Below are positions 16,166-64,000 of a stretch of DNA of 64,000 bases, piece after piece. The translations under genes were made by a program, and so were the position numbers. Numbering within the stretch: position 1 is the stretch's first letter; every line of letters begins with the position of its first letter. The notes under the pieces were generated by a model that did not search any database, was not told the origin of the DNA, and was given only the letters and a program-made list of their open reading frames with translations. The stretch spans positions 62,001 to 126,000 of IMG/VR virus record IMGVR_UViG_3300028558_000016; one strand, written 5' to 3'.

Positions 16166-17626
16166 TTAGATTTGTACTACGTCGTATCTTTTATCTGAAA
16201 TGGTTTTCATCATCACGCTGTATGGTGTAAACTCTTCAAGACCGCCTTTAACAATTGATTGCAACAATGCTGGACTAAATCCAGAAACAAGTGCTGAACC
16301 TGTTTGAGAGAATTGAACAGGATTGTTATCCTGTCTTGCATGTACTTTCCACCAAACAGTTTTTGGAACAACATACACGATGTCAGAACCAGAAGCTTTT
16401 AATTTTGCATTTGCCTCAGCATATAATCTCACGACTAATTGTTGTGCTGTTGGATTATCCCAACCTTTGAATGCATCAAATTCCATATCGGAAATAACAA
16501 GCATCATTGTTGGCATTTCATCCTGAACAACTTTATGCTTAACTGCATGATCAAGCAATGAACGGTAAGCAGCTTCAATGTTAGTGTTGTAACCAACATG
16601 TCCACCGATTTGGTTCATTCTGCTTGGAAGATCTTTTCCTTTTAAATACTGAAGCGTTGGAACATCAGTAAATGTCATGAACGCATCTTTAAATGGTCCT
16701 TCGTTTCTTTCGCAAATATACAATGCCAATGACAATGCAACATCCAATGCGCTCAAGTTGTTGTTTCCACCAACTGCACGTTGCATTGAACCTGAAACGT
16801 CAGCCATAGGCATGATTCTTTCGGTTGCACCTTCAAGGAAGTTAGGAAGAGTTTCCCACTGTTTTTGATTAACAATTTTATCTCCACCATGTTTCAATGA
16901 CTTGATAATATCGTATGGATAAACTGCTCCAGCGTTTACTTTAACTCCAACTTCGCCTTTCTTAAGGGCTTCTCTATATTTCACAAAGCGGTCCGTATCT
17001 TGCTTGTGGAAAGCGGTCATGTATCTCGACATGGCCAATGATGGAACATGACTGTAATTAATTGCGCCAAATTCTTTAGCACACATCTTTTGCTCAACAG
17101 TATTGGAAAGCTTCACAAGAAGCTGTCTGAATTCTTTTGGAGATACCTCCATGTGTTTTCTTATCTTGTTAGCAAAAGTTCCTTTACGTGGCATCCACTT
17201 AGCACAAAGACCATGTTCGGATTTAAGCGCGGCAATTATAAATTCGATAGCTGGTTTTTCCAACTCAGTATTTTCAGTAATTAGAAGGTCATCCCATCTT
17301 CCAAACTCAGGAATAATGGAAATATTCTTCTCAGCAACATCCGGATGGTTTGTTGCAAGGAATAATTGGAACACATCACGGAAAACTTGACGCTCGCCAG
17401 AACCTCCACGCACATCACGTGCCCAGAATAAAATTCTCATTGCTGTCATAGGGTCTTCGCCGTATGCAGCAGAGAAAAGCTTAATAAGCCTTTGTTTATC
17501 CTGTCCTCTCATTGCACCAATGTCACCATAAAGGTCAACACACGCATTAAGGGTTGTGGTATTAGTAGTCATACCATTTTCGGTACGACCTGTCTCTGTT
17601 CTCATCGCGTCTACTAATCTTGTCAT
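16166..17626 (-). CDS. DUF2828 + vWA protein (Ro60/TROVE-related)
   Basis: TENG, RDVRGGSGER, GRWDDL, AKWMPR, VPSLAM, MIDAS DVSGSM, ISDMEFD, VSGFSP. Confidence 0.9.
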   Translation of the reverse strand: MTRLVDAMRTETGRTENGMTTNTTTLNACVDLYGDIGAMRGQDKQRLIKLFSAAYGEDPMTAMRILFWARDVRGGSGERQVFRDVFQLFLATNHPDVAEKNISIIPEFGRWDDLLITENTELEKPAIEFIIAALKSEHGLCAKWMPRKGTFANKIRKHMEVSPKEFRQLLVKLSNTVEQKMCAKEFGAINYSHVPSLAMSRYMTAFHKQDTDRFVKYREALKKGEVGVKVNAGAVYPYDIIKSLKHGGDKIVNQKQWETLPNFLEGATERIMPMADVSGSMQRAVGGNNNLSALDVALSLALYICERNEGPFKDAFMTFTDVPTLQYLKGKDLPSRMNQIGGHVGYNTNIEAAYRSLLDHAVKHKVVQDEMPTMMLVISDMEFDAFKGWDNPTAQQLVVRLYAEANAKLKASGSDIVYVVPKTVWWKVHARQDNNPVQFSQTGSALVSGFSPALLQSIVKGGLEEFTPYSVMMKTISDKRYDVVQI

Positions 17627-18943: not shown

Positions 18944-19185
18944 TCACCCAAAATTGGTTTGACCGCTTTTAACTCATCTGGAAGTCCTGGAACTTCCTTG
19001 TGAATAAAGCTTGGAACTTTTCCACACTTCTCACATAAATGCAATTCTATTGGAATCATGTGTTCAATTCCATCAGGACTCATCAACGGTGATAGTCTTT
19101 TAACAGCTGTTGCTGATCTGAATAGAATTCCACCACATTCACACGGCTGCCAAGGAGCTTGTGATATATTTACTTTTGTGTCCAT
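18940..19185 (-). CDS. zinc-ribbon protein
   Basis: CECG ... CEKCG. Confidence 0.65.
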   Translation of the reverse strand: MDTKVNISQAPWQPCECGGILFRSATAVKRLSPLMSPDGIEHMIPIELHLCEKCGKVPSFIHKEVPGLPDELKAVKPILGE

Positions 19186-19186
19186 A

Positions 19187-19717: not shown

Positions 19718-20562
19718 AATATTGTAACTATTTCAACGTAATCTTTTATTCCGTTCATTTCTTTTGAGTCCTCACAAATAATCACAGGATGCAATTGACC
19801 CAATGTTCCACATCCACATCCGCAATCTGCCATTATGACAGTCTTTGATTTTCCACCATGTACATAATGCTCAATTCTCGGAAAATTAATTCCTTCACTT
19901 AACCTGTGGAAATGTCCATGCACTGACATCGCTTTATTACCTGGAACTTTAAATGCAGAATCCAACTTATCATAATCACGGCTTCTTCCCCATAACAAAG
20001 TATCATCAGTAACATTCTTTGGATCAGACTGCTGTGCATGACAGAAGAAAATCAAATCAGTCTCATGTTTTCTTTTTCCATGCATTTTTAAGAATTTATA
20101 TTCCTCACTTTCTTTTATGATAGGAATATAATCGTATAAATCCAATTTGTATTGTATCTCAAGCGAGTTTAATCCAGTTGTATCAAATGGAATTCCAAAC
20201 ATCTGAACACATGTTTTCATTCCTCCGTTATTCAACCACATCACATGATTTGAGCCGTATGCCTTTTGATCCTCGAAATAAATCTTACTGTCTTCAACGG
20301 TTCCTATCAAGAATTGATCATGATTTCCTATTAAACAAATGGCACCTCTCTCTTGAACGTATTCTTTTACTTTTGCCAATACGTATTTTGAATCAGGACC
20401 TCTGTCGATATAATCTCCAAGGAAAATGAATTGAATTGTAGCATCAATTTTGATGGTTCCATTCTTCTGTTGAATTTCAATCCACGCATCGACATCGGCC
20501 AAAGCCTTATCGAGCTTGTCTCTCGTTCCATGTATATCTGCTATGACAACGTAATATTTCAT
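19714..20562 (-). CDS. metallophosphoesterase (PPP-like Ser/Thr phosphatase)
   Basis: DIHG, GDYIDRG, GNHD, HGH. Confidence 0.9.
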   Translation of the reverse strand: MKYYVVIADIHGTRDKLDKALADVDAWIEIQQKNGTIKIDATIQFIFLGDYIDRGPDSKYVLAKVKEYVQERGAICLIGNHDQFLIGTVEDSKIYFEDQKAYGSNHVMWLNNGGMKTCVQMFGIPFDTTGLNSLEIQYKLDLYDYIPIIKESEEYKFLKMHGKRKHETDLIFFCHAQQSDPKNVTDDTLLWGRSRDYDKLDSAFKVPGNKAMSVHGHFHRLSEGINFPRIEHYVHGGKSKTVIMADCGCGCGTLGQLHPVIICEDSKEMNGIKDYVEIVTIL

Positions 20563-20948
20563 ACTACTATTTGTGGATATTTGTTTTTAATCTCTTCGCA
20601 TAATTCCCATTCATCATTCGCAAAAGCATCTTCAAAAATAATCTTTATCGCATTTATGTGTCCTTGCTCTGCCTCTTCCCATGTGCAATATCTTTCTTGA
20701 TATTCATCATAATGAACTCCCATTCTTCCACCAAATATCATCGTCTCAAATAATACCGGAGGTCCATCATCTCCCCAATTATGATCTATCCCAAGAAAAA
20801 CAGTTGACACCGTGATGGAATCATTATTCAATCTATCAAACGCAACTCGCCTTACATCTTTTTGTTCAAACCACTTAGCCCATTCCAACAACTCAGCTTC
20901 AACCGGTTTTTTATCGACCAATATGTAGTTTCCCATTTTCATGTTCAT
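20559..20948 (-). CDS. conserved phage hypothetical protein
   Basis: VSTVFLGIDH...PVLFETMIF...RYCTWEEAEQGH; ATG start preferred over GTG at 20966. Confidence 0.6.
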   Translation of the reverse strand: MNMKMGNYILVDKKPVEAELLEWAKWFEQKDVRRVAFDRLNNDSITVSTVFLGIDHNWGDDGPPVLFETMIFGGRMGVHYDEYQERYCTWEEAEQGHINAIKIIFEDAFANDEWELCEEIKNKYPQIVV

Positions 20949-21065
20949 AATGTTTTTCGTGGACACCTAACAGCGAGCAGGATTCCTTCACGTAATCCCC
21001 TGTGTCTATGCGCGTGAAACGCTCAGGGTTCCTGGTTTGTGCCCGGTACTTCGACCCCTTTTTCC

Positions 21066-21254
21066 CTATATCGTCTTCTTTTTTGCTTTGACCAGTTTGT
21101 CATCAAGCTTATGGAGCTTCTTGTACATCTCAGTCCTCGACTTTTCCAAGAAGCGAATGGTAGCACTTATTTGCATAAGTGCACCAAACGTTTCTGTACG
21201 CTCTTTTTTAATTTCAGAAAACTTCTGAAGAGATTTTAATTTCTTTGTTTCCAT
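21066..21254 (-). CDS. small basic coiled-coil protein
   Basis: METKKLKSLQKF...; ATG directly after the upstream stop. Confidence 0.5.
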   Translation of the reverse strand: METKKLKSLQKFSEIKKERTETFGALMQISATIRFLEKSRTEMYKKLHKLDDKLVKAKKKTI

Positions 21255-21255
21255 T

Positions 21256-22020
21256 TTATTTGTATTCTGAATTCCAAACTTCTTTAGAAACATTTCTTTC
21301 CAAGAATGAGGTCGATAATCTTCTTGGTTCAAAGAACCTTGAAAATAAGAAATGCACAATGGAAGCCGCAGCAAACACAAATGATAAAGCCCAATGCCAA
21401 TTTAAAAACTTTACAGCAATGAAAGCAAGAGGAACATAAATCTGAAGCGTGTTCACAATATACCATGACCAAAAGCTTCTGAACTTAATTCCTTTGAACC
21501 ATCTTGCAATGGAAATATCATTTCCCCATTTATGAACGAGATAATAAAATCCATCGCCTATTGGATAAAACAACAAAGGATCAACTGGATGCTCCTTCAA
21601 TTCAAAACTTTCCTTTGGAGCAACTATTTTAAAATCACAATGATCCATTTTACGGTTTCCAGTCGATTCATACATTTTTTGAAACTCATTGATCTTGTTT
21701 GGTAACATTGGATCAACGTGTCCTTTGTAGTGACGGATATTTAAACATCTCAACTTGTATGCGAAGCAAAGGTTTTTTATCTCATTGCTGGAAAATACTC
21801 TCGAAAGGTCAAGACCCTTCATGTAATTTTTTCTTCCTTCAATAACATCTTTCTTTTTAACTGCATAATCAAGTCCCATCTTCTTTAGAACTTCGATGTC
21901 CTCATCTAAATTCTTTTCCAAGATATTGTTAGCTTCATCAATGATGAGCTGTTCTTCTTTTGTGAAGATGCTGTTGCTCTTCCGTGCAATCAGCCTTTTT
22001 TCGAGATTAAGTTTAAACAT
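21256..22020 (-). CDS. membrane protein, paralog of 25572-26360
   Basis: DPLLFYPI..YYLVHKWG.DIS plus two C-terminal TM helices. Confidence 0.7.
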   Translation of the reverse strand: MFKLNLEKRLIARKSNSIFTKEEQLIIDEANNILEKNLDEDIEVLKKMGLDYAVKKKDVIEGRKNYMKGLDLSRVFSSNEIKNLCFAYKLRCLNIRHYKGHVDPMLPNKINEFQKMYESTGNRKMDHCDFKIVAPKESFELKEHPVDPLLFYPIGDGFYYLVHKWGNDISIARWFKGIKFRSFWSWYIVNTLQIYVPLAFIAVKFLNWHWALSFVFAAASIVHFLFSRFFEPRRLSTSFLERNVSKEVWNSEYK

Positions 22021-22038
22021 GTTTTTATTTTTTAGTTA

Positions 22039-23049
22039 TTATTTCTTTCCACCAAAACCAAGTCCGCCGCTGCCGGCTGATTGTCTTGATGATTTTGGTT
22101 TTTTCATTTCACCGAAGTGCTTCATTACATCATCGAAATCTTTTCCAAGAATCATCGTTGATACGACAAGTTCTTTGATGTGCGACAACGAAAGTCCTTC
22201 TGTGTCATTCACCCATTTCTTCATATCAATCTTCTTAAGATCTGATTCATGGAGTTTGTGTCTGATGAAGTATTCTCTAACTTCCGCATTTGGATGTGGA
22301 ATTTCGTAAACTCTATCAAACCTTGAAGGTCTGTTGGAAATCCTATCCTGTAATCTCTCTGGATAGTTTGTGGTCGCAAGATACACAACGTTCTCAATTT
22401 GATTCACTCCATCCAACACATTCAACAATGCAGACAATAATCCTTGACCAGCTGTAACGATGTTATCGATGTCCTCAATAATAACTACCAATGGACGCTT
22501 AGGTTCGATCTGTCTGAATATCTGCGTGAAATCAGTAAACAATGAAACCGCTCTTTCTCCGTTTAAAGAGAATACTATTCCATCTTTCTTTATTATTTTG
22601 TTGATCAAGTTCTGCATCAAATAACTCTTTCCACAACCCGGAGGCCCATGTAAAAGAATTCCACGTTTGTGAACCATCTTGTATTTCTTGAAACGACTTT
22701 CCATTTCCCAGAAACTATCGATGTCCAAAAGAATCTCCTTCATCTCATCGATAGGAAGCTCCATGATGCTATCACTCAATACAACTTTTTGTCGTTGCAA
22801 GTAATATCCTTTATTTGGATCGCTTAATATCTCGTAAACACCCGGAGGAGTTTTACCAGTGGTAGTGAATGTCGGAAAATAACATCCATCCTGACCAACA
22901 GCCCATTGACAGTAACCTGCCATTCTTTCTGCTGCGTCCTCAATGGAAATTTCCTTCTTTTCTTTGACAGTTTCAGTTTCAACTGCTTCTTCCGTCACAG
23001 CAGTTTCTGCTACCGCCAATTCTTCTGTTTTTTTAGATCCTTTTGCCAT
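22039..23049 (-). CDS. AAA+ ATPase
   Basis: GPPGCGKS, IIEDID, TTNYPE, RPSRFD. Confidence 0.9.
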   Translation of the reverse strand: MAKGSKKTEELAVAETAVTEEAVETETVKEKKEISIEDAAERMAGYCQWAVGQDGCYFPTFTTTGKTPPGVYEILSDPNKGYYLQRQKVVLSDSIMELPIDEMKEILLDIDSFWEMESRFKKYKMVHKRGILLHGPPGCGKSYLMQNLINKIIKKDGIVFSLNGERAVSLFTDFTQIFRQIEPKRPLVVIIEDIDNIVTAGQGLLSALLNVLDGVNQIENVVYLATTNYPERLQDRISNRPSRFDRVYEIPHPNAEVREYFIRHKLHESDLKKIDMKKWVNDTEGLSLSHIKELVVSTMILGKDFDDVMKHFGEMKKPKSSRQSAGSGGLGFGGKK

Positions 23050-23070
23050 AGTGTTTATTTAATTAATTGT

Positions 23071-23379
23071 TTATTTTCCTAATGCTCCATTAACTTCATC
23101 CATCAATTTATTCTCCATCAAATACCTCTTAAGCATAAGAAGTTTTCCTTGTAGAATCTTGGCATCCTCTGTAAGCATTTCTTTTTCATGCTCAGATTTT
23201 TTTCTCTGTTGATCCATCTTTCTTTGAGCCTCTTCTGGTATATGTCCCTTTAGAACAGTTCCAGCCATGATGTCAAATAAAACTTCACTCGTCTTTCCAG
23301 CATTAGGCAATGCATCAAGACCATCAACCAACATTTTAAAATCCTTTTCAGTAAGGTTTAAGTTTTTAATATTTTCCAT
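23071..23379 (-). CDS. hypothetical protein
   Basis: ORF in operon. Confidence 0.6.
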   Translation of the reverse strand: MENIKNLNLTEKDFKMLVDGLDALPNAGKTSEVLFDIMAGTVLKGHIPEEAQRKMDQQRKKSEHEKEMLTEDAKILQGKLLMLKRYLMENKLMDEVNGALGK

Positions 23380-23380
23380 G

Positions 23381-25252
23381 TTATTTTTTCTTTTCGTTCT
23401 TATCTTCCTTCTTTTCAGATTCAGTACCGATTTTATTTCCCATGCTCTCCAACAACTTCAATCCAAGCAATCCATCCATCGCGCCATTGTTGTTTTGTCC
23501 CATGATTAATATCTCCGGCATAACTTTAATTTTATCCTTGCCAATAGACTCAGTCACCTTTAATTGGGTGAAGTTGTCTTTGCCCATTGCATCAACGGAT
23601 AATTTATAAGCTTCTGCTGTTGATTTTCCAATTGCTAATATCTTAGCAGCCTCAGCAGTACCAGTCACAGTAATCTTTTCAGCCTCAGCATTCGCTTTCA
23701 ACTTAACTGCTTTCGCTTCAGCATCCGCAGAAAGTTCCACCGATTTAGCTTCACCAGTTGCTTTCTTAACTGCGGCATCCGCAATCTTCTCAGCAATTTC
23801 CACACCCTGATTAGCTTCAACTATTTTAGATTGCATGTCTGCAATTGCTCTCGCCTTCTCAAATTCTTGGCGAGTCTCTTCTGATTTCTTCTGAGCACCA
23901 AAAGTTATTTGTTGTTCATCAGCAAGTTTTCTATCGCTCAATGTCTTCATGATTGAAGCTGGTGGAACTATATCTCCAATCAATGTGTCAACACCTTCAA
24001 CATTATATTGGTGCAACACTTTGTCGATATGCTCTTTCGCTTCTTTCTGTCTTTCTGACCTCTTCTCTAAGAATGCAAGTACATCCGAGCTCTGTGCAGA
24101 ATTTCTGAAGTAGTTTCCAATTGTAGGTTCCAATACCTGTGACACGAGGTTATTCATGTTTCCAAATCTTGCAATAACCTTAGGAGCTTCTGTCATTGGA
24201 ATGTGTATGATCTGAGACACATCCAAATTAAATTGGAAACCGTCTTTAGAACGAACAGTGATTGTGGATAAATGCTTGTCTAAGTTGTGAGACTCATTAC
24301 GTGCATCTGCCCAATTTAAAACCAAGTTAGTAGTTGGAACAGTTTCAACCTTCATCGTGTATCTGTTTATCGGATACTTACCTGGTCCGAATGTTTCCAC
24401 CCAAACACCTTTTTGCCCTTTGGCAACTAAATTTCCATGCTTGAATGCATCACCTGTTACGTCTTTACCTTCTTCACCAATGAATGAGATAACAACACCA
24501 ACGTGACCAATTGGAATTTCAGTCATCTGAGTTTCCTCAATAACAACTGCCCATGGGTTTATATTATATGAACCAGCAAGAATAACTTGTGGCTGCAATC
24601 CTTTGTTTCCACCTGATTTTAAAAACTCATCAAACTTTTGAAAGTTATTATGTCCCTCAATAGTTCTACCAGCGATTTGTCCTTCTTCCAATGGAAGACC
24701 ATCCAATGTCGTTACAATACCAACTTTATTCTCAGCGATGTTTGTTATGTTAACAAGCGTTACTGTAAACAAATGGCTGTTGATACGATAAGAACCTGCT
24801 GTTATGTAAGATGTTTGTCTTCCTTTGTGTCCACCATTCTTTAAGAATTGATCTGCGTTTTGAAATGAATCACAATCAACGTGGCGTCCGAGAATTGAAC
24901 CAACTGGAATTGAAGCTCCGTCCTTCGCAAGAACCAATCCTATTTTTCCTTCCGGAATGATAAGGAAATTCTCTTGAACTATCTCATATTGCCAAGGCCA
25001 AATCCAGAAGTAAAGTCCTGGAGCAAGAGTTGTCGCTTGAAATCCGGATTCACCTTTCGTTGCTATGATCTTTCCATCAGGCAAGTTTCTATTTGAACCG
25101 AATAACACGAATTTTTTTGTCACTAATCCTATTTTATCTTCGGGAATTATTACCACGCCGAATAGTCTCAACACTAATTTGTAAAAAATTATTGCGAGTA
25201 TTGGAAAAATAAGCCACCAATAGTGTGCTGCATTATGCAAGAAGTCTTTCAT
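23381..25252 (-). CDS. SPFH/band-7 (flotillin-like) membrane protein
   Basis: N-terminal TM, repeated IP...IGLV/G.Y.IN modules, ITVRSKDGF.F.LDV, Ala/Glu-rich coiled coil. Confidence 0.9.
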   Translation of the reverse strand: MKDFLHNAAHYWWLIFPILAIIFYKLVLRLFGVVIIPEDKIGLVTKKFVLFGSNRNLPDGKIIATKGESGFQATTLAPGLYFWIWPWQYEIVQENFLIIPEGKIGLVLAKDGASIPVGSILGRHVDCDSFQNADQFLKNGGHKGRQTSYITAGSYRINSHLFTVTLVNITNIAENKVGIVTTLDGLPLEEGQIAGRTIEGHNNFQKFDEFLKSGGNKGLQPQVILAGSYNINPWAVVIEETQMTEIPIGHVGVVISFIGEEGKDVTGDAFKHGNLVAKGQKGVWVETFGPGKYPINRYTMKVETVPTTNLVLNWADARNESHNLDKHLSTITVRSKDGFQFNLDVSQIIHIPMTEAPKVIARFGNMNNLVSQVLEPTIGNYFRNSAQSSDVLAFLEKRSERQKEAKEHIDKVLHQYNVEGVDTLIGDIVPPASIMKTLSDRKLADEQQITFGAQKKSEETRQEFEKARAIADMQSKIVEANQGVEIAEKIADAAVKKATGEAKSVELSADAEAKAVKLKANAEAEKITVTGTAEAAKILAIGKSTAEAYKLSVDAMGKDNFTQLKVTESIGKDKIKVMPEILIMGQNNNGAMDGLLGLKLLESMGNKIGTESEKKEDKNEKKK

Positions 25253-56551: not shown

Positions 56552-56819
56552 TACGCAACGAACTCTGATAAGAACTCAGAAAGTTCAGGACTGTCAGACT
56601 ATTAGTGACTTAGAAAAACTGTTTGATGAATTTAAAACTATTCAAGGCGCAAGCAAAGAATACAGTTCTGAGACACTCAAATTCAAATTAGAACAATTGA
56701 GATTTTTATTAAACAGCGAATTAAAATTCGATGATGTTCCATGGAACGTGATAACAAGATCACATGGCATAAGAGCCAAATGCATGGAATTATTTTACTA
56801 CGAAAAACATGGAGTTTAA
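56535..56819 (+). CDS. hypothetical protein
   Basis: Coupled ORF; ITRSHGIRAK. Confidence 0.55.
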   Translation: METLNDTQRTLIRTQKVQDCQTISDLEKLFDEFKTIQGASKEYSSETLKFKLEQLRFLLNSELKFDDVPWNVITRSHGIRAKCMELFYYEKHGV

Positions 56820-56833
56820 GCACTACACAAACT

Positions 56834-57673
56834 ATGTCCATAAAAGATATTTTTAAAGGAATTTTTGATAAAGCATTTCAGACTCTTGGAGACCGAATGA
56901 AAGGTTACGAGAAAGCAGATAAGAGAAAGCTTGAACCAAAAACTCCGGTTATTATAAGGCTCGACGGAAGAGCTTTTCACACATATACAAGAGGGTTTAA
57001 GAAACCTTATGACGAAGTCATTGGTAACGCTATGAAATACACCACAATAAAATTGTGCGAGGAAGTTCAGAACGTCAGGCTTGCGTATTCACAATCGGAC
57101 GAGATAACATTATTCTTGGCTGATTATGGAAATAAAAACACTCAGCAATGGTTCAACGGAGAAGTTGACAAGATCGTTTCATTGTCTGCTTCTATTGCAA
57201 CGTATTACTTCAATGAGTATATGGAAATACATCATTGGAGCAAATACCCAGAGAAGAAAAAACCTGCCACATTTGATTCAAGGTCATTCAACATTCCAAG
57301 ACATGAGGTCACCAATAATTTTATTTGGAGACAACAAGATGGAATAAGAAATTCCATATCGGGGTTGGCACAAGCTAATTATTCAGATAAAGAACTTCAT
57401 CGTAAAAGCACAGCTCAAATGTTATCCATGTTAGAAGATAAAAAAGTACATTGGGATGAGATGAGCACTTACAAGAAAAGAGGTTTTTGCGTAACTAAAG
57501 AATATTTCGTGCTTGAAGCTTCTGAACTCAATCTTCCTGAAAATGTGAAGGTTACAGAACCCATAATGAGATCTAAATGGGTTGTGGATGAGGACGTACC
57601 AATCTTTTCAGAAGATAAATCCTATATAGAGGTTTTGGTAACATTAGGAGAACTTGCCAATAAATATGAATAA
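56834..57673 (+). CDS. tRNA-His guanylyltransferase / Thg1-like 3'-5' polymerase
   Basis: RLDGRAFH, QSDEI, FDSR, WRQQD..RNS. Confidence 0.9.
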   Translation: MSIKDIFKGIFDKAFQTLGDRMKGYEKADKRKLEPKTPVIIRLDGRAFHTYTRGFKKPYDEVIGNAMKYTTIKLCEEVQNVRLAYSQSDEITLFLADYGNKNTQQWFNGEVDKIVSLSASIATYYFNEYMEIHHWSKYPEKKKPATFDSRSFNIPRHEVTNNFIWRQQDGIRNSISGLAQANYSDKELHRKSTAQMLSMLEDKKVHWDEMSTYKKRGFCVTKEYFVLEASELNLPENVKVTEPIMRSKWVVDEDVPIFSEDKSYIEVLVTLGELANKYE

Positions 57674-57700
57674 TTAGCAAATTTTTAGTACTTTTACAAT

Positions 57701-58870
57701 ATGAAAGAGGATACTAAGAAAAGAGCAGTTACCATATTGCTTCATAACGATGATGGAGACATCCTCGCAGTGTCTCGTAAGAATGACATCAATGATTTCG
57801 GATTGCCTGGTGGAAAAATCGATGAAGGTGAAACAGAAGAGCAAGCAATCATAAGAGAAACTAAAGAAGAAACAGGCCTTGACGTTTCAAACCTGCGTCC
57901 ATTCTTTGTAAGAGAAGACGGCGAATATATCAGCACAACTTTTATAGGAAATTATTCAGGTGAAATTTCAACCTCGGAAAAAGGTAAAGTTATTTGGACA
58001 AATTTCGATAAAATCAAAAAAGGTTCATTTGGAAAATACAATGAACAATTAGAAACTTATTTAAAACAGCAACACAAATTCCAGGAACGTGACCTGATAT
58101 TAAATCCTGCAACAGGCGAGGCATTCTTAATATTGCATAAGACAGAAGAAAGTCCGTTAGCAGCTGGAGGATATTTCGTGAAAGCATTTTGTTCAACCAT
58201 TGGATTTGGCTTTATTAAAAAGACGGCATTCGATAATATTAGAATGTATTTGGTTGCTTCGGCTTCGATGATTGGTCCAAATGGTCAAATGATCGAAGGG
58301 TTTGAATCAAAAGATTTTCCACTTAACAAGCTGTTGGAATCTCATTTCACGACTGCTGTTAAAGCTCGCCAGTTTGCGTGTCAATCACATTTTGATGCAA
58401 ATCAATACTACAAGCTTAATAATGAAGTTGATGTTTTATATTCATATCATTTAAGAAAGGTCGTAGATGTTGGAAGAAGATTTCAACACTTGATTCCAGC
58501 AATAGATTGGCCCTATGTTGAAGGAGGTCTTTGGAACCACGATTGTGTTGAAGATGCAAGACAAACCTTCAATGACCTGAAATCTGCAGTAGGAGAAAGA
58601 TCCGCTGTAATAGCATTTGCATTAACCAATTCAACCGGAACAATCAGAAGCGAAAGAGCTGACGATAAGTATTACTTGAAAATAAGAACTACTGAATATG
58701 GAACTTTTGCAAAACTGTGCGACAGGATTGCTAATATCGAACATGGATTAAAACATGGAAGCTCAATGACCAAAAAATACAAGAAAGAACATGAGCATTT
58801 CAAAAAGGAATTATATGTGGCTGGAGAACTCGAGCCAATGTGGGAGTATCTGGAAAACTTGATAGCGTAG
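57701..58870 (+). CDS. Nudix + HD (SpoT/Mesh1-like hydrolase) fusion
   Basis: PGGKID.GE....IRETKEETG; Y..HL..V, HDCVED, KLCDRIAN. Confidence 0.85.
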   Translation: MKEDTKKRAVTILLHNDDGDILAVSRKNDINDFGLPGGKIDEGETEEQAIIRETKEETGLDVSNLRPFFVREDGEYISTTFIGNYSGEISTSEKGKVIWTNFDKIKKGSFGKYNEQLETYLKQQHKFQERDLILNPATGEAFLILHKTEESPLAAGGYFVKAFCSTIGFGFIKKTAFDNIRMYLVASASMIGPNGQMIEGFESKDFPLNKLLESHFTTAVKARQFACQSHFDANQYYKLNNEVDVLYSYHLRKVVDVGRRFQHLIPAIDWPYVEGGLWNHDCVEDARQTFNDLKSAVGERSAVIAFALTNSTGTIRSERADDKYYLKIRTTEYGTFAKLCDRIANIEHGLKHGSSMTKKYKKEHEHFKKELYVAGELEPMWEYLENLIA

Positions 58871-58897
58871 TTGTAGTATAACTTTAAACTTATTGGA

Positions 58898-59332
58898 ATG
58901 GGAGCACATGCAAGCGCATATTTATATTGGGGCATCGACTTCAATGATGTGTATGTAGAAAAGATCGAGAAAGAAGAATATGACATTCATGATCAAAAGA
59001 CTGGAAAGAAGACAGGTAAAAAAGGAACAGAGTCAAAGACCTATTATGTGAATAAACATAATGGAAAAAAATATGACCACGATGATTATTCTCTTGGCAT
59101 AAAAGAAAAATACATCCATAAAATGGAACAGGAGTCTGATTCAAAAATTATCGGAGTATTGGTTGGAGAAGTATCTGAACAGAATGGAGGATCTCACGAC
59201 ATCGATGACTCAATGTTGCAAAAAGCAAAAGATGAGCTTGATAAAGTTTTGTTGACACATCTTCTTACTGGAACTGGATTGATTGCAAAAGTTAAGCCGA
59301 GATTAATTTTAAACCTTTATTGGAGCTATTAA
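58898..59332 (+). CDS. hypothetical protein
   Basis: ORF in operon. Confidence 0.55.
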   Translation: MGAHASAYLYWGIDFNDVYVEKIEKEEYDIHDQKTGKKTGKKGTESKTYYVNKHNGKKYDHDDYSLGIKEKYIHKMEQESDSKIIGVLVGEVSEQNGGSHDIDDSMLQKAKDELDKVLLTHLLTGTGLIAKVKPRLILNLYWSY

Positions 59333-59577
59333 TGAAAACAACAATAAAAATAGAAAAAGAAGACATCGTCACATCCAGATTTGGAATGAATGTCGAAGTG
59401 CAGTTGAACGAGAACACAAGCCTTGTTTTTACTCCAGAAGCTCTTGATGAACTTGTTAAGGATTATGAAGTCATCAAAGAAGAGATCGAAAGAACAAACA
59501 GCCAAATAGTGGAAAGTCTTAGGACTGCCCATGATATTAGTCAATTAGAATTTCCATTCGATGAAGTTAGGATTTGA
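59332..59577 (+). CDS. hypothetical protein
   Basis: TAATG-coupled ORF. Confidence 0.55.
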   Translation: MKTTIKIEKEDIVTSRFGMNVEVQLNENTSLVFTPEALDELVKDYEVIKEEIERTNSQIVESLRTAHDISQLEFPFDEVRI

Positions 59578-60217
59578 TTATTATATTGAAAACGGATATA
59601 AAGTATTTACAAAGGAGCATCACCTCAAACGAGGAACATGTTGCCAAAACGGTTGCAGACATTGCCCGTGGAATTTTAAACTTAAGAAAATGAACAAAGA
59701 CGATTTATTTTTTGACATGGATGGCGTAATGGCAGATTTTCATGGAAAAATTGACAAGCTCATCAAAGAGCATTATGCAGATGAAACGATCACTGAGAAA
59801 ATAGTTCCAGTAGAAGAACTAACGGAAAATATTTATGTTGAAGGACATCCAGAAAGAGAACCATTCACTGAAGCGTTTGAAAGTCTTCCTGGATTTTACA
59901 GAGATCTTGTTCCAATAGAAGGAGCAATAGAAGCGTACAAAGAACTGTACAAACACTATAATGTGTTTATTTTGTCGACTGCAAGCTGGGGAAATCCATC
60001 TTGTTTCACGGATAAACGTTTATGGGTAGAAGAACACCTTGGAGAATTTGCACACAAGCGTTTAATATTAACACACCACAAAGAACATTTTACTGGAAGA
60101 GCACTTATAGATGACAGAACAAAGAATGGAGCCATCGATTTCAAAGGAGAGCACATTCATTTCAGAACGGATAAATTTAAAGATTGGAACACAGTTTTAA
60201 AATATTTATTACCATGA
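59561..60217 (+). CDS. 5'(3')-deoxyribonucleotidase (NT5C, HAD) with N-terminal Cys-rich DUF5522-like peptide
   Basis: HLKRGTCCQNGCRHCPW; DMDGVMADF, K..WV, LIDDR. Confidence 0.85.
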   Translation: MKLGFDYYIENGYKVFTKEHHLKRGTCCQNGCRHCPWNFKLKKMNKDDLFFDMDGVMADFHGKIDKLIKEHYADETITEKIVPVEELTENIYVEGHPEREPFTEAFESLPGFYRDLVPIEGAIEAYKELYKHYNVFILSTASWGNPSCFTDKRLWVEEHLGEFAHKRLILTHHKEHFTGRALIDDRTKNGAIDFKGEHIHFRTDKFKDWNTVLKYLLP

Positions 60218-61525: not shown

Positions 61526-61615
61526 ATGACAACTACTTTAACATACACGAACAGGTTTACTGCGGATTGCGCGGATGAACAATTGTTGGGTTTGTTAAAC
61601 AGTCCGATGCGATAA
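61526..61615 (+). CDS. putative 29-aa Thr-rich leader peptide
   Basis: MTTTLTYTNRFTADCADEQLLGLLNSPMR; overlaps the antiterminator strand. Confidence 0.45.
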   Translation: MTTTLTYTNRFTADCADEQLLGLLNSPMR

Positions 61616-61664
61616 AATATTTCATCAACTTTAACAAACCCGAGCTAACCACTCGGGTTTTTTT
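61586..61664 (+). promoter_or_regulatory. attenuator: antiterminator (61586-99/61630-43) overlapping terminator (61636-61664)
   Basis: TTGGGTTTGTTAAA pairs with TTTAACAAACCCGA; terminator AAACCCGAG-ctaacca-CTCGGGTTT-TTTT. Confidence 0.7.
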
Positions 61665-61688
61665 GTCTTGTATCGAAGGTAATTATAC

Positions 61689-61760
61689 GGTTCTGTAGTC
61701 AAAGGGTTACGATTTTTGGTTGTCAACCAAGAGGTGCGGGTTCGAGTCCCGTCAGAATCG
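61689..61760 (+). tRNA. tRNA-Asp(GTC), weak D-arm
   Basis: GGTTCTG/CAGAATC acceptor, loop TTGTCAA, T-arm GCGGG-TTCGAGT-CCCGT. Confidence 0.75.
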
Positions 61761-61762
61761 CT

Positions 61763-61842
61763 GGAGGAAACATGGGTTCGAATCCCATACGAAATGGAAA
61801 CACATTTCGTTCGTTTAGTGGCAGGACGTCTCCCCGAATTGG
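61763..61842 (+). ncRNA. circularly permuted tRNA-like element (YrlA-like Y RNA or permuted tRNA)
   Basis: Order is T-arm, closed acceptor stem, D-arm; the ends form the anticodon-stem equivalent GGAGG/TCTCC. Confidence 0.75.
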
Positions 61843-61848
61843 AAGTTT

Positions 61849-61919
61849 GGTCCGGTGGCCGAGTGGTTAGGCGGAGCTCTGCAAAAGCTCATACGGCGGT
61901 TCGAATCCGTCCCGGACCT
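61849..61919 (+). tRNA. tRNA-Cys(GCA)
   Basis: Canonical cloverleaf, loop CTGCAAA, U73. Confidence 0.95.
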
Positions 61920-62038
61920 CGTGGTGTAGAAGAGTATTGTGAAAATGGAAACCGTGCAAGGTGTAACAGTAAACAAAATGCTTCGTTCGTAAATGATTGG
62001 TCACATGAATTAATTCACTTGGCCATAACTGTAAAATT

Positions 62039-62112
62039 GGTGGCGTAGTTCAGCTGGTTAGAATGCCTGCCTGTCACGCAGGAGGTCACGGGTTCGAGTC
62101 CCGTCGTCACCG
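62039..62112 (+). tRNA. tRNA-Asp(GTC)
   Basis: Canonical cloverleaf, loop CTGTCAC, G73. Confidence 0.95.
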
Positions 62113-62129
62113 CAAATGTTCTTTGAAAT

Positions 62130-62203
62130 GGTCCTATGGTGGAATTGGTTAACACGTCAGTTTCTCAAACTGAAGATTACGGGTTCGATCCCCGTTGGGA
62201 CTA
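62130..62203 (+). tRNA. tRNA-Glu(CTC)
   Basis: Stem TCAGT/ACTGA, loop TTCTCAA. Confidence 0.9.
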
Positions 62204-62207
62204 CGAA

Positions 62208-62301
62208 TGAATTAAGCCGATAGACTGGTTAATGGCGCGTCGACAACGTCCGTGATAAGGTTTCCATGATGAAACTCATGCTGATCACGTAGGCTAATTC
62301 A
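62208..62301 (+). ncRNA. candidate structured RNA between tRNAs
   Basis: Terminal stem TGAATTA(A)GCC/GGCTAATTCA; inner CGTGAT/ATCACG and CATGA/TCATG. Confidence 0.45.
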
Positions 62302-62308
62302 CTTATTT

Positions 62309-62385
62309 GGGGCCTTAGCTCAGTTGGCCAGAGCACCTGCCTTGCACGCAGGGGGTCATCGGTTCGAATCCGATAGGCTCCACCA
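62309..62385 (+). tRNA. tRNA-Ala(TGC), CCA encoded
   Basis: G3:U70, loop CTTGCAC. Confidence 0.95.
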
Positions 62386-62677
62386 AATGATTAGTTGAAG
62401 TAGATGGAAAATCGTTCTGTTGGTAACCATTTTCCAAATTAATGTGATGATGTCTCAGACTTATATCACGAACCAACAAAGAGTGGTGAACTTAAAAATC
62501 ACCGTGAGTAAAAAAGAAGATAACGTTCTTTTGATATTTAAAAACAAGAAGTCGATGATCTACCTTGAAAAAGGTGAATCAACGAAAGTTCCGATCCCAA
62601 TGATCACAACGTGTTTTACGTTGAAGAAGTTTAGATTGAAATTATCGTTCGACTTAATGTGTGAAAAATAATTTCAC

Positions 62678-62751
62678 GCTCCTGTAGTGGAACTGGTTAA
62701 CACGTCCGCCTTTCACGCGGAAGATCGCGGGTTCGAACCCCGTCGGGAGTA
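62678..62751 (+). tRNA. tRNA-Glu(TTC)
   Basis: Stem TCCGC/GCGGA, loop CTTTCAC. Confidence 0.95.
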
Positions 62752-62756
62752 CAAAT

Positions 62757-62842
62757 GTTGCCGTATGCAAATTGGTTTAAGCGAACAGACTTTCAATCTG
62801 TGTTCCGTATGGAACGTGCGGGTTCGAACCCCGTCGGCAATA
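62757..62842 (+). tRNA. atypical class II tRNA: TTC (Glu) anticodon with long variable arm and A73
   Basis: ACAGA-CTTTCAA-TCTGT, then GTTCC-GTAT-GGAAC variable arm. Confidence 0.8.
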
Positions 62843-62928
62843 CAAAAATAAAATAATAGGAGGACCCAGGCTGTGGACGCAACAAAAATGTAATTTCTCT
62901 TTACGAACAGTTTTGCAAAGAGAACGGA

Positions 62929-63720
62929 GTGGAATTTGAAATAGTAAAATCCGTAATTCCACATGATGACACAACTCTTTTCTGCTGTTCAGGAATGCAA
63001 CAGTATAAAAGCAAGTTTAAAGATCAAAATTATAAATGCACGATTTCAAACATCCAACCGTGCATCAGATTAAATGATCTTGAAGAAATAGGAGACAGCA
63101 CTCATTTCCTATACTTCAACATGATGGGATTCTTTTCTTTCAGAGAATGGACTGTGAAAAGAACAATTGATTTTTGGATGTCGTTCATTAATAAGATTGG
63201 TCTTAAAGTGGATTATGTTACAATCCATCCAGACAAAAAAGAATGGAAAGACTTTTATATTGAATACAATGTTGAAGTAAAAGAAGATCTCGAATGCACT
63301 TGGACTGATGGAGACCTTGGAGGATACTGCACAGAATTTTATGTGAACGGTATTGAGATAGGAAACATAGTCAATTGCAATGGTGATTGCATAGATGTTG
63401 GATTTGGTTTAGAAAGACTTGACATGCTTGTCAACAATAAAACAAAAGATGAGATAAGCGTGTTGAAGGAAACCATTGAAAAGATAATTGAAAGCGGTTA
63501 TGTCCCTGGACCTAAACAGCAGGGATACATCTTGAGAAAGCTTTTGAGATTGTTATATGTGAAAGGTGGAAGTATCGATCATGAATTCTTTGTCAAGGAA
63601 AAAGAAAGACAGGAACGATTGGTAAGAAAATATTCTTTGCTAAAACAAAAGCACAAAGACAAAAGCAAAGAATGGTGGTATGGAACACATGGAATTGATT
63701 TGAATGAAATGGGGCCTTAG
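62929..63720 (+). CDS. miniature alanyl-tRNA synthetase (catalytic domain and compressed helical domain; no editing or C-Ala domain)
   Basis: TLF..SGMQQYK, QPCIR.ND...GD..H...F.M.G.FSF, IEIGNIV, IDVGFGLERL, GYILRKLLR, Y.THG. Confidence 0.85.
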   Translation: MEFEIVKSVIPHDDTTLFCCSGMQQYKSKFKDQNYKCTISNIQPCIRLNDLEEIGDSTHFLYFNMMGFFSFREWTVKRTIDFWMSFINKIGLKVDYVTIHPDKKEWKDFYIEYNVEVKEDLECTWTDGDLGGYCTEFYVNGIEIGNIVNCNGDCIDVGFGLERLDMLVNNKTKDEISVLKETIEKIIESGYVPGPKQQGYILRKLLRLLYVKGGSIDHEFFVKEKERQERLVRKYSLLKQKHKDKSKEWWYGTHGIDLNEMGP

Positions 63721-63785
63721 CTCATTTGGCTTAGAGCGCTTGCCTGGCAGGCAAGAGGTGACGGGTTCGAAACCCGTAGGCTCCA
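63711..63785 (+). tRNA. tRNA-Ala(GGC)
   Basis: G3:U70, loop CTGGCAG; overlaps the AlaRS stop codon. Confidence 0.9.
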
Positions 63786-63789
63786 CTAT

Positions 63790-63854
63790 CGGAAAGGATC
63801 ACAACATCCCGTACGAGAAAGAACGACACAACTGTTGTGAGTTGGAAAGTTCTT
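63790..63854 (+). ncRNA. candidate kissing-loop RNA
   Basis: Hairpin loops CACAAC and GTTGTG are exact complements. Confidence 0.5.
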
Positions 63855-63855
63855 C

Positions 63856-63927
63856 GGGATCATAGTATAAGGGCAAGTACGCATCCCGCTCAGGGATGAA
63901 ATGCAGGTTCGAATCCTGTTGGTTCTA
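63856..63927 (+). tRNA. atypical tRNA (nominal CTC anticodon, G33, G3:U70, A73)
   Basis: GGGATCA/TGGTTCT acceptor, CATCC-CGCTCAG-GGATG, canonical T-arm. Confidence 0.65.
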
Positions 63928-63932
63928 CAATT

Positions 63933-64000
63933 GGGGAATTGATTTGAAATTGGCTATCATGTTAGACTTGCAATCTTTCGTTACGGGTTCGAGCCCCGTA
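63933..64000 (+). tRNA. tRNA-Ala(TGC)-like, truncated by the window end, weak anticodon stem
   Basis: GGGGAAT start, loop CTTGCAA, T-arm ACGGG-TTCGAGC-CCCGT. Confidence 0.6.

What the first reader, a model, noticed from the sequence alone, without database searches (positions are those of the whole stretch)
61761..61842. Circularly permuted tRNA mimic (YrlA-type Y RNA or permuted tRNA gene) inside the tRNA cluster
Seen: the 3' half of a tRNA comes first: GGAGG-AAAC-ATGGG(TTCGAAT)CCCAT-ACGAAAT-G. A GAAACA loop follows, then the 5' half: C-ATTTCGT-TC-GTTT-AGTGGCA-GGAC-G-TCTCC. The acceptor stem is perfect (8 bp) but closed by the loop. The D-loop GG and the T-loop are canonical, and the free ends lie where the anticodon loop should be. 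Known: bacterial YrlA Y RNAs have this T/closed-acceptor/D topology and partner Ro60; permuted tRNA genes are described from some algae and archaea. The 3' tail CCCGAATTG resembles, but does not match, the GNCGAA(N)G Ro-binding motif as I recall it. Inference: this is an anticodon-less tRNA elbow mimic, plausibly a ligand for the DUF2828 Ro-like protein ~45 kb away, and with no anticodon loop for anticodon nucleases to cut.
Basis: partly seen in the sequence, partly recalled or inferred. Interest (0 to 1): 0.88.

Follow-up and report, generated by a model that had tools for sequence, protein, structure and literature searches.

The report
Y-RNA-like tRNA mimic inside tRNA operon
Between two ordinary tRNA genes, a giant phage carries a conserved, rearranged tRNA copy whose amino-acid-accepting end is sealed by a loop; it is a stripped-down relative of the Y RNAs (YrlA type) that partner Ro-type proteins, not a working tRNA.

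Summary
Window 61763-61833 reads as the 3' half of a tRNA, a 6-nt loop, then the 5' half. It folds into a permuted cloverleaf, and ARAGORN calls it a tRNA only after re-permutation.

It is not an assembly artefact. The same element sits after the first tRNA-Asp in four diverged lineages from independent assemblies. A homologue also lies between tRNAs in an unrelated viral contig. Across eight sequences 97.9% of stem cells pair and seven pairs change on both sides. The T-arm block is 28/28 identical where flanks are 62-69%.

The body is tRNA-Glu-like. The closed "acceptor" varies from 4 to 8 bp, so it cannot be a rejoined decoding tRNA.

A viral-contig scan found about 23 loci with similar RNAs. 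Some lie directly beside canonical Ro60 (TROVE) genes and others beside DUF2828 genes.

The element belongs with YrlA-type Y RNAs. It lacks their Ro-binding helix and motif, gets no Rfam YrlA hit, and lies 44 kb from the only Ro-like gene seen.

Verdict: a new, minimal variant of a known kind, embedded in a tRNA operon. The DUF2828 partnership is plausible but unproven.

Separately, the tRNA operon appears to be controlled by a leader-peptide attenuator rich in Ala, Asp, Cys and Glu codons.

The parts
61761..61762 (+). CU spacer, the predicted 5' end of the released RNA. It directly follows the tRNA-Asp discriminator.
   Evidence: Invariant CT in all six clade sequences. tRNA-Asp ends at 61760/61.
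61763..61767 (+). Closing stem, 5' strand (GGAGG). It corresponds to tRNA positions 39-43.
   Evidence: Pairs with 61829-33. Changes run U.G / U-A / C-G, and A-U to G-C in L167; all keep pairing.
61768..61771 (+). 4-nt variable loop (AAAC) with no position 47. C48 can pair with G15.
   Evidence: Read. A 4-nt variable loop is typical of tRNA-Glu (own knowledge).
61772..61788 (+). T arm with the canonical TTCGAAT loop.
   Evidence: The block 61761-88 is 28/28 identical to L008, although flanks are 62-69% identical.
61789..61810 (+). 'Acceptor' helix (7 bp plus G-C) closed by the GAAACA loop, so there is no free 3' end to charge.
   Evidence: The helix is kept with unrelated sequences in L008 (CGGC/GCCG), L167 (CTGGA/TCCAG) and L146. 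Three of four aligned pairs change on both sides.
61811..61828 (+). U8-C9, the D arm (GTTT/AGTGGCA/GGAC) and G26. This is a tRNA-Glu-type D arm.
   Evidence: The 13:22 pair is U.G, U-A or C-G in different lineages.
61829..61833 (+). Closing stem, 3' strand (TCTCC). It corresponds to tRNA positions 27-31.
61834..61848 (+). Single-stranded 3' tail, an anticodon-loop remnant. It runs up to the RNase P site of tRNA-Cys.
   Evidence: Length is 9-16 nt and sequence is poorly conserved (44-80% identity).
61689..61760 (+). Upstream tRNA-Asp(GUC). Its 3' processing would define the element's 5' end.
61849..61919 (+). Downstream tRNA-Cys(GCA). Its RNase P cleavage would define the element's 3' end.
16166..17626 (-). 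DUF2828 + DUF7788 (vWA) protein, the candidate Ro-like partner. Association only.

Best explanation
The element is a trans-acting, non-chargeable tRNA mimic of the YrlA (bacterial/phage Y RNA) kind, derived from a tRNA-Glu-type body.

Inferred from position: it is transcribed with the phage tRNA operon. It is cut out by the enzymes that mature its neighbours: 3' processing of tRNA-Asp 2 nt upstream, and RNase P at the next tRNA 9-16 nt downstream.

Shown by covariation: it folds into a tRNA L-shape with a T-loop/D-loop elbow. Its acceptor arm is sealed by a loop. Its anticodon stem ends in a free 5' CU and a single-stranded 3' tail.

Inferred from gene neighbourhoods elsewhere: it serves as the RNA ligand or scaffold of a Ro-type ring protein. 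Here that is most likely the DUF2828-vWA protein at 16166-17626. Because the usual Ro-binding helix is missing, binding would have to use the 5-bp stem plus 3' tail or the tRNA-like body itself.
For: - Structure: all lineages fold to the same permuted cloverleaf. On A5, 97.9% of 144 stem cells pair, 7 pairs change on both sides, and the covariation score is 0.474 against 0.231+/-0.032 in shuffles (0/500). Slid controls pair at 38-60%.
- Selection: the CT-to-T-arm block is 28/28 identical between the window and L008, while flanks are 62-69% and the neighbouring tRNA-Asp is 66%.
- Not a tRNA: native order is not called; the re-permuted order is.
- tRNA-Glu body: plus U11-A24, U13.G22, A46, no position 47 and G73 read.
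- Same architecture as YrlA: the scanner that finds the element also finds the Kingsolomon RNA that Rfam scores as YrlA (37.9 bits), directly after a DUF2828 'Ro-like RNA binding protein' gene.
- Sequence relatives sit beside canonical TROVE+vWA_Ro60 genes in L164 (46 nt downstream), L224 and L218.
- Relatives also sit beside DUF2828 genes in L140, L191, L198 and L205.
- Among RNA-selected loci, DUF2828 occurs in 6/23 with such an RNA against 2/95 without (Fisher p = 6e-4).
- The L008 lineage has both the element and DUF2828 on one contig.
- The best PDB match of the DUF2828 profile is the Thermus phage Ro60 (9KOP/9L5Y), at a marginal E = 0.0022.
- HHpred links the Listeria phage orthologue to Rsr (PMC12282133).
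- No other YrlA-like RNA was found in the 64-kb window.
Against: - No Rfam YrlA hit even at E <= 10.
- No 5'/3' Ro-binding helix is possible, and the GNCGAA motif is not conserved.
- The Ro-like gene is 44 kb away on the other strand. YrlA genes normally lie within 4 kb on the same strand (PMC4201824).
- Foldseek found only weak vWA matches for the DUF2828 model, with no Ro60 ring.
- Close relatives L016, L019, L020 and L011 lack the element, so it is dispensable.
- There are no expression or binding data.
- Eight DUF2828 loci from cultured phages (within 3 kb of the gene) showed no such RNA. The looser scanner later found one in a ninth, L109.
Confidence: 0.55

Rival explanations
1. A Ro-independent tRNA-body decoy. 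The RNA keeps only the tRNA-like half of a Y RNA. It acts alone by occupying a protein that recognises the tRNA elbow or the tRNA-Glu D-helix. Candidates are a host tRNA-targeting nuclease, a modification enzyme or a synthetase.
For: - The Ro-binding module is absent while the T arm, D arm and variable loop are the most conserved parts.
- tRNA-Glu-type D-helix features are retained.
- The element lies in an operon of tRNAs and synthetase-like genes, not beside the Ro-like gene.
Against: - Its closest sequence relatives are next to Ro60/TROVE or DUF2828 genes.
- No candidate target protein was identified.
Confidence: 0.2
2. A cis-acting processing or spacer element. The tRNA-like fold only recruits RNase P/Z to help mature the neighbouring tRNAs, and the released RNA has no role.
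For: It abuts tRNAs on both sides in the window clade, L167 and L138.
Against: - Other tRNA pairs in the same clusters need no such spacer.
- Relatives of the RNA occur away from tRNAs, beside Ro genes.
- Conservation is concentrated on the elbow, not at the junctions.
Confidence: 0.08
3. A decaying relic of tRNA-cluster rearrangement (tandem duplication plus deletions) with no function.
For: - These clusters do contain truncated tRNAs, for example the tRNA-Cys in L003 and a fragment in L019.
- The element is absent from several relatives.
- A tandem duplicate would automatically give complementary halves.
Against: - The 28/28 identity, against 62-69% in flanks, rejects neutral decay.
- Every stem substitution keeps pairing, and the acceptor helix was replaced three times by new complementary sequences.
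- No donor tRNA for gene conversion was seen in the loci held.
Confidence: 0.06
4. A true permuted or split tRNA gene. RNase P and 3' trimming open the closed acceptor, and the ends at the anticodon loop are joined by an RNA ligase, giving a decoding tRNA (GAA anticodon).
For: - Re-permuted with the first 7 tail bases as loop, ARAGORN calls tRNA-Phe(GAA).
- L003 and L017 tails read CTGAAAT, a canonical loop.
- The window's 7-8 bp acceptor would suit RNase P, as in M. smegmatis YrlA (PMC4201824).
Against: - The acceptor helix is only 4 bp in the L008 group and 5 bp in L167.
- The triplet changes from GAA to GAG, and in L167 the tail does not match at all.
- Joined loops would be 11-18 nt.
- There is no bulge-helix-bulge motif.
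- No RNA ligase was found among the ORFs scanned in the window.
Confidence: 0.03
5. The tRNA-like domain of a two-piece (permuted) tmRNA, working with the phage SmpB seen in relatives.
For: - Permuted tmRNA genes have the same T-arm / acceptor / 5'-strand order.
- There is a weak tmRNA T-arm hit.
- SmpB genes lie near the cluster in L008, L017, L020 and L011.
Against: - There is no G3.U70: the first pairs are A-U, U-A, U-A.
- Only 9-16 nt lie before the next tRNA, so there is no tag reading frame or pseudoknot.
- There is no tmRNA_permuted hit.
Confidence: 0.01

Closest known systems
YrlA-type bacterial and phage Y RNAs (Rfam RF02553; Chen et al. 2014, PMC4201824)
   Same: - Same order of modules: closing stem, 4-nt variable loop, T arm, closed 'acceptor' stem-loop, 2 nt, D arm, closing stem.
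- tRNA tertiary-contact nucleotides are kept.
- Acceptor stem length varies.
- Sequence relatives lie beside Ro60/TROVE genes.
   Different: - No extended 5'/3' helix and no GNCGAA motif for Ro binding.
- No Rfam hit.
- Wedged between tRNAs, so its ends are set by tRNA processing.
- 44 kb from, and on the opposite strand to, the only Ro-like gene, which is DUF2828 rather than TROVE.
Thermus phage phiLo Ro60 with Yrl1/Yrl2 (PMC12135203)
   Same: - A phage-encoded Ro-type ring+vWA protein with phage-encoded small RNA ligands.
- That protein is the best PDB sequence match of the DUF2828 profile.
   Different: - Those RNAs were picked by a stem-bulge-stem shape with a CGAA motif, and they lie upstream of the Ro gene.
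- The element here has neither feature.
Circularly permuted tRNA genes of the red alga Cyanidioschyzon merolae and some archaea (own knowledge; cited in PMC4090602)
   Same: The 3' half lies upstream of the 5' half, joined at the acceptor by a short intervening sequence.
   Different: Those are rejoined through a bulge-helix-bulge splice into full tRNAs with conserved 7-bp acceptors and 7-nt anticodon loops. Here both features vary freely between relatives.
Two-piece (permuted) tmRNA
   Same: Permuted gene order of a tRNA-like domain.
   Different: No alanine identity pair, no tag frame and no pseudoknots.
mascRNA-type tRNA-like small RNAs released by RNase P/Z (own knowledge)
   Same: A tRNA-like fold whose ends are defined by tRNA-processing enzymes.
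   Different: Those keep normal tRNA order and are eukaryotic.

Membership tests
YrlA / bacterial Y RNA | tRNA-like domain in the order T arm, closed acceptor-like stem-loop, D arm | tested here: met
   Folds, covariation, and the same scanner that finds a Rfam-scored YrlA.
YrlA / bacterial Y RNA | Conserved tRNA tertiary-contact nucleotides (U8-A14, G15-C48, G18G19 with T-loop, T54-A58) | tested here: met
   Read directly. All are present and invariant in the clade.
YrlA / bacterial Y RNA | Ro60-binding module: a helix formed by the 5' and 3' ends carrying GNCGAAN0-1G | tested here: not met
   tRNA-Asp ends 2 nt upstream and the next tRNA starts 9-16 nt downstream. The CGAA-like tail occurs only in the window lineage.
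YrlA / bacterial Y RNA | Encoded within about 4 kb of a Ro60/TROVE gene, on the same strand | tested here: not met
   The nearest Ro-like gene (DUF2828) is at 16166-17626 on the minus strand, 44 kb away. No TROVE domain was found among the ORFs scanned. Not all ORFs were scanned.
YrlA / bacterial Y RNA | Scores with the Rfam RF02553 covariance model | tested here: not met
   No hit at E <= 10 in a 401-nt search or a whole-window search. Positive controls scored 24-50 bits in L100, L128, L176 and L224.
YrlA / bacterial Y RNA | Bound by a Ro-type protein in vivo | not testable with these tools
   Needs pull-down or EMSA.
Permuted tRNA gene (functional tRNA after rejoining) | 3' half upstream of the 5' half, joined at the acceptor | tested here: met
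Permuted tRNA gene (functional tRNA after rejoining) | Conserved 7-bp acceptor and a 7-nt anticodon loop with a stable anticodon after rejoining | tested here: not met
   The acceptor is 4-8 bp. Tail plus leader would give an 11-18 nt loop. The triplet is GAA, GAG or absent.
Permuted tRNA gene (functional tRNA after rejoining) | Leader-trailer bulge-helix-bulge for circularisation | tested here: not met
   The 2-nt leader cannot pair with the tail.
Two-piece tmRNA | G3.U70 alanine identity, tag reading frame, pseudoknots | tested here: not met
   No tmRNA_permuted hit.
Canonical tRNA | Called by ARAGORN or the Rfam tRNA model in native order | tested here: not met
Ro60/TROVE family (for the DUF2828 protein) | HEAT-repeat ring plus C-terminal vWA with a MIDAS motif | tested here: inconclusive
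   - The helical N-half plus vWA C-half was modelled at pLDDT 80.
- The profile's best PDB hit is the phage Ro60, at only E = 0.0022 and in the vWA region.
- Foldseek gives only weak vWA matches.
- Pfam files it as DUF2828+DUF7788, not TROVE.

The most novel reading that the evidence does not exclude
This is a minimal Y RNA that has moved into a tRNA operon. It is made only when the operon's Ala/Asp/Cys/Glu-sensing leader attenuator opens, and it is excised by RNase Z and RNase P. It then works as a tRNA-Glu-body mimic that couples a DUF2828 Ro-like particle, or another tRNA-body-binding factor, to translation stress during infection. That would make DUF2828 proteins, present in more than 700 sequenced phages, a second widespread family of Y-RNA-binding proteins whose ligands can be hidden among tRNA genes.
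Probability: 0.2. Interest if true: 0.75.

Novelty: new variant of a known kind. Interest (0 to 1): 0.55.

Why it matters
Y RNAs and Ro proteins are conserved from bacteria to humans, yet what the tRNA-like half of bacterial Y RNAs does is still unknown.

This element is that half on its own. It is under strong selection and is delivered by the tRNA-processing machinery. That makes it a natural minimal construct for asking what the tRNA-like domain binds.

The wider scan also shows tRNA-Glu-like permuted RNAs next to both canonical Ro60 genes and DUF2828 genes in many uncultured phages. This gives a testable function (Y-RNA binding) to DUF2828, a protein family found in Felix O1-like, KVP40-like, P100-like and mycobacterial phages.

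It also warns annotators that Y-like RNAs can hide inside tRNA clusters, where tRNA finders and the Rfam model both miss them.

Tried and rejected
- Megablast and blastn of the region against GenBank phages gave only T-arm-sized matches.
- Exact and degenerate pattern scans of IMG/VR for the 3' half returned only the source contig, or nothing because a storage-chunk boundary splits the site.
- A single-protein locus search with the Thg1-like protein returned only the source contig.
- Rfam found no YrlA, tmRNA_permuted or any other family on the element at any threshold.
- Thermodynamic stability is not above shuffles, so it was not used as evidence.
- Foldseek of the DUF2828 model against PDB gave no Ro60 ring match. 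phmmer against PDB gave nothing.
- I considered that the tail triplet GAA/GAG (both Glu codons, on a tRNA-Glu body) is a codon mimic that pairs with tRNA-Glu anticodons. I dropped this because the L167 homologue's tail has no such triplet and tail identity is only 44-80%.
- The conserved alternative hairpin (tail GGAA pairing with the closing strand) exists only in the window and the L008 group, not in L003 or L017.
- Eight DUF2828 loci from cultured phages were searched within 3 kb of the gene for YrlA-like RNAs. Rfam and the scoring scan found none, apart from tandem-tRNA false positives. The looser scanner later found one in Archie (L109).
- The paper's supplementary tables listing phage YrlAs are not held.
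- Co-occurrence of the element with DUF2828 in the element-less relatives could not be checked, because only +/-10 kb of each contig can be read.

Full report
**1. What is there**

The window is part of a 482-kb viral contig, IMGVR_UViG_3300028558_000016 (also Ga0265326_10000002). Window base 1 is contig base 62001. The contig encodes a T4-type capsid protein, so it is a giant myovirus.

- CT, then GGAGG, then AAAC.
- A T arm with a TTCGAAT loop.
- ACGAAAT-G, a GAAACA loop, then C-ATTTCGT.
- TC, then a D arm with an AGTGGCA loop.
- G, then TCTCC, then a 15-nt tail.

tRNA-Asp ends 2 nt before the element and tRNA-Cys begins right after the tail. The minimum-free-energy fold is the permuted cloverleaf. 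Neither ARAGORN nor the Rfam tRNA model calls the native order. ARAGORN calls a 71-nt tRNA once the halves are swapped.

All the usual tertiary-contact nucleotides are present: U8/A14, G15/C48, G18-G19, T54/A58 and G26/A44.

**2. More than chance, and not an artefact**

I wrote a strict scanner for T arm, immediately adjacent closed hairpin, 2 nt, D arm, and a 5-bp closing stem.
- It found nothing in three block-shuffles of 1.68 Mb.
- In the real DNA it found only this element's copies and one mycobacteriophage RNA.
- A looser version found no false positive in a 1.59-Mb control of phage loci holding 89 tRNAs.

Relatives came from homologues of the neighbouring Thg1-like protein and from one metagenome pattern scan. 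The element sits at the same place, after the first tRNA-Asp plus CT, in:
- L003 (Thg1 92% identical).
- L017 (75%).
- The L008/L009/L010/L012/L015 group (70%).

These come from separate JGI, ENA and Logan assemblies.

Four other relatives lack the element: L016, L019, L020 and L011.

**3. It is under selection for structure**

Identities between the window and the L008 lineage:

| Segment | Identity |
|---|---|
| Flanking non-coding and leader regions | 62-69% |
| Adjacent tRNA-Asp | 66% |
| CT-to-T-arm block | 28/28 |
| D-arm / closing-strand block | 83% |
| Acceptor hairpin | 48% (replaced) |
| Tail | 62% |

Within the clade all 84 stem cells pair.

I then added L167, a homologue from an unrelated high-GC viral contig that also lies between tRNAs, and L146. 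On this eight-sequence alignment:
- 97.9% of 144 cells pair. By my column count, the three exceptions look like a one-column slip of L146.
- Seven pairs change on both sides.
- The covariation score is 0.474 against 0.231+/-0.032 in shuffles (0 of 500 reach it).
- Slid controls pair at 38-60%.

The acceptor-position helix is rebuilt from unrelated sequences: ACGAAAT/ATTTCGT, CGGC/GCCG, CTGGA/TCCAG and CGGGGCT/GGCCCCG. A helix is therefore needed there, but its sequence and length (4-8 bp) are free.

That pattern fits a sealed arm. It does not fit a tRNA acceptor that must be recognised and charged.

**4. What it derives from**

The body is tRNA-Glu-like:
- UC at positions 8-9.
- A GUYU/GGAC D stem with U11-A24 and U13.G22.
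- A 4-nt variable loop lacking position 47.
- G73.

The best-matching real tRNAs are Glu(UUC) genes. One caveat applies: the top match, L014, was retrieved through its 3' half. In L167 the tail still reads ..TTCAC, which I read as a remnant of a Glu anticodon loop.

**5. What kind of thing it is**

The Rfam YrlA consensus has the same module order. It adds a long helix formed by the two ends, which binds Ro60. The element has no room for that helix and gets no YrlA score.

Most are tandem tRNAs. About 23 hold true permuted tRNA-like RNAs that no tRNA finder calls.

These RNAs come in two subtypes, often side by side:
- One has the Glu-type D arm and AAAC/TTAC variable loop. Several of these have the very same T arm as the window element.
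- The other has a GCTC/GAGC D arm.

Rfam gives sub-threshold YrlA scores (24-50 bits) to several of them.

Their neighbours are informative:
- In L164 a TROVE+vWA_Ro60 gene ends 46 nt before a Glu-type RNA.
- In L224 two RNAs lie just upstream of a TROVE+vWA_Ro60 gene.
- In L218 one lies just upstream of a TROVE gene.
- In L140, L191, L198 and L205, more weakly in L174 and L219, and in the mycobacteriophages L100 and L109, the neighbour is a DUF2828 gene instead.

Among the RNA-selected loci, DUF2828 is present in 6 of 23 with such an RNA against 2 of 95 without (p = 6e-4). Counting the TROVE loci too gives 9 of 23, but TROVE was not searched in the loci without an RNA, so that figure is not a fair comparison.

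The element is therefore a member of a phage family of tRNA-Glu-like Y-type RNAs. It is a stripped-down member that keeps only the tRNA-like domain.

L167, L138 and one L128 RNA are also pressed against tRNAs. Insertion into tRNA clusters is thus recurrent.

**6. The DUF2828 protein**

- The 16166-17626 ORF is on the minus strand. It carries DUF2828 plus DUF7788 and falls in PHROG 850, 'RNA-binding protein'.
- It has homologues in 709 GenBank phage records, some annotated 'Ro-like RNA binding protein'.
- In cultured phages the gene often lies beside tRNA clusters or RNA ligases: Felix O1-like allfine, Chewbecca, LP-124 with RtcB and a ROOL RNA, and GAP32 with an RNA ligase.
- A profile of 30 homologues finds the Thermus phage Ro60 (9KOP/9L5Y) as its best PDB match, at a marginal E = 0.0022.
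- That phage protein binds two phage Y-like RNAs and host PNPase (PMC12135203).
- HHpred on the Listeria phage orthologue points to Rsr (PMC12282133).
- The AlphaFold model (pLDDT 80) has a helical N-half and a vWA C-half. Foldseek recovers only weak vWA matches.
- The L008 lineage carries both the element and DUF2828 on one contig.
- No YrlA-like RNA lies next to the DUF2828 gene, or anywhere else in the window.

Together this makes the partnership plausible. It is not shown.

**7. Mechanism proposed**

Shown:
- The fold.
- Its conservation.
- The sealed acceptor.
- The position between tRNAs.

Inferred:
- Co-transcription with the operon.
- Release by 3' processing of tRNA-Asp and by RNase P at the next tRNA.
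- Action in trans as a tRNA-shaped ligand of a Ro-type protein or another tRNA-body binder.

In the window and L017 the 7-8 bp helix might also be cut by RNase P, as reported for M. smegmatis YrlA (PMC4201824). The 4-bp helix of the L008 group shows this cannot be the conserved function.

**8. Rejected readings**

- A rejoined decoding tRNA. The acceptor, loop length and triplet all vary.
- A two-piece tmRNA. There is no G.U identity pair and no tag frame.
- A neutral relic. The conservation and covariation argue against it.
- An assembly error. The arrangement recurs in independent assemblies.
- A codon-mimic tail. The tail is not conserved in L167.

**9. Novelty**

Already in the literature:
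- Phage Y-like RNAs beside Ro60 (PMC4201824, PMC12135203).
- The idea of a Ro/TROVE platform with a tRNA-like partner in jumbo phages (PMC7824862).

To my knowledge, the following have not been described. My searches found no description of them:
- A minimal form without the Ro-binding helix.
- Its embedding between tRNAs.
- The tRNA-Glu-type subfamily.
- The recurrent pairing of such RNAs with DUF2828 genes.

I rate this a new variant of a known kind.

Noticed in passing
window 61526-61667; also L003 11458-, L017 8023-, L008 14282-, L016 10870-, L019 13731-, L020 15313-, L011 16218-: A 28-32-codon leader ORF sits just upstream of the tRNA cluster in all eight relatives. Its conserved core is Ala-Asp-Cys-(Ala/Asp)-(Asp/Glu)-Glu, which are exactly the amino acids of the tRNAs in the cluster. 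The Leu-Gly-Leu codons downstream (GGGTTTGTT..) are complementary to the 5' strand of the following terminator hairpin. This gives an antiterminator of about -26 to -31 kcal/mol against a terminator of -12 to -15 in 7 of 8 loci, and G.U changes keep the pairing in L011. It looks like trp/his-type ribosome-mediated attenuation controlling a phage tRNA operon. This may be more novel than the finding itself.
   Followed up: partly
window 61689-64000; L008 14441-15464; L017 8191-10363; L016, L020, L011: In all relatives the cluster holds only tRNA-Asp, -Cys, -Ala and -Glu, apart from one Ser call in L008. A tenth tRNA starts at 63933 and is cut by the window end.
   Followed up: partly
window 62929-63720 (+); L017 10936-12192; L011 17970-19406: Synthetase-like genes lie inside or next to the tRNA cluster. 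The window has a 263-aa fragment matching the N-terminal catalytic part of alanyl-tRNA synthetase. L017 has a class II (Asp/Lys/Asn-type) synthetase. L011 has a class I synthetase. Phage SmpB genes lie nearby in L008, L017, L020 and L011.
   Followed up: no
window 62757-62843; L017 9493-9579; L016 11019-11102; L020 15473-15556: An 84-87-nt tRNA with a Glu (UUC) anticodon but a long variable arm, which is a class II shape normally seen in Leu, Ser and Tyr tRNAs. It is conserved across relatives.
   Followed up: no
window about 62205-62305; L020 about 16290-16390: A roughly 100-nt stretch between tRNA-Glu and tRNA-Ala appears conserved, by eye, in a relative whose Thg1 is only 48% identical. It matches no Rfam family and is possibly another structured RNA.
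   Followed up: no
L003 11774-11828; L019 about 14215-14245: Truncated tRNA fragments: the 5' two-thirds of tRNA-Cys fused to the next tRNA, and a 5' piece of a tRNA-Asp-like gene. These clusters rearrange often.
   Followed up: no
L102, L104, L106, L107 (GenBank phages allfine, GAP32, Chewbecca, LP-124): DUF2828 genes sit directly beside tRNA clusters, an RNA ligase (GAP32), or an RtcB ligase plus a ROOL RNA (LP-124; 87 bits, just under threshold). This suggests an RNA-repair or tRNA theme for the family.
   Followed up: partly
L101 11731-11844 (Aeromonas phage Ahp1): A 113-nt tRNA-like gene in normal order, with about 45 extra nt in place of the anticodon arm. It lies 3 kb downstream of the DUF2828 gene on the same strand and is annotated only as a pseudo-tRNA.
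   Followed up: no
L121, L128, L140, L205, L213, L224: Permuted tRNA-like RNAs often come in pairs in one locus, one with a Glu-type D arm and one with a GCTC/GAGC D arm. This is reminiscent of YrlA plus YrlB.
   Followed up: partly
window 14957-25252 (-): Neighbours of the DUF2828 gene are a PRPP synthetase-like protein, a calcineurin-like phosphoesterase, an AAA ATPase and a 623-aa SPFH/Band-7 protein. A Band-7-like gene also lies near the DUF2828 gene of mycobacteriophage Kingsolomon.
   Followed up: no
window 56741-60217 (+) and all relatives: A conserved module upstream of the tRNA operon: a Thg1-like tRNA 5'-end polymerase, a long NUDIX protein and a 5'-nucleotidase.
   Followed up: no
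L176 11098-11273 (-): A permuted tmRNA above the Rfam threshold (50.2 bits) in a 372-kb phage contig. The same contig also carries two YrlA-like RNAs and, on the overlapping locus L191, a DUF2828 gene.
   Followed up: no
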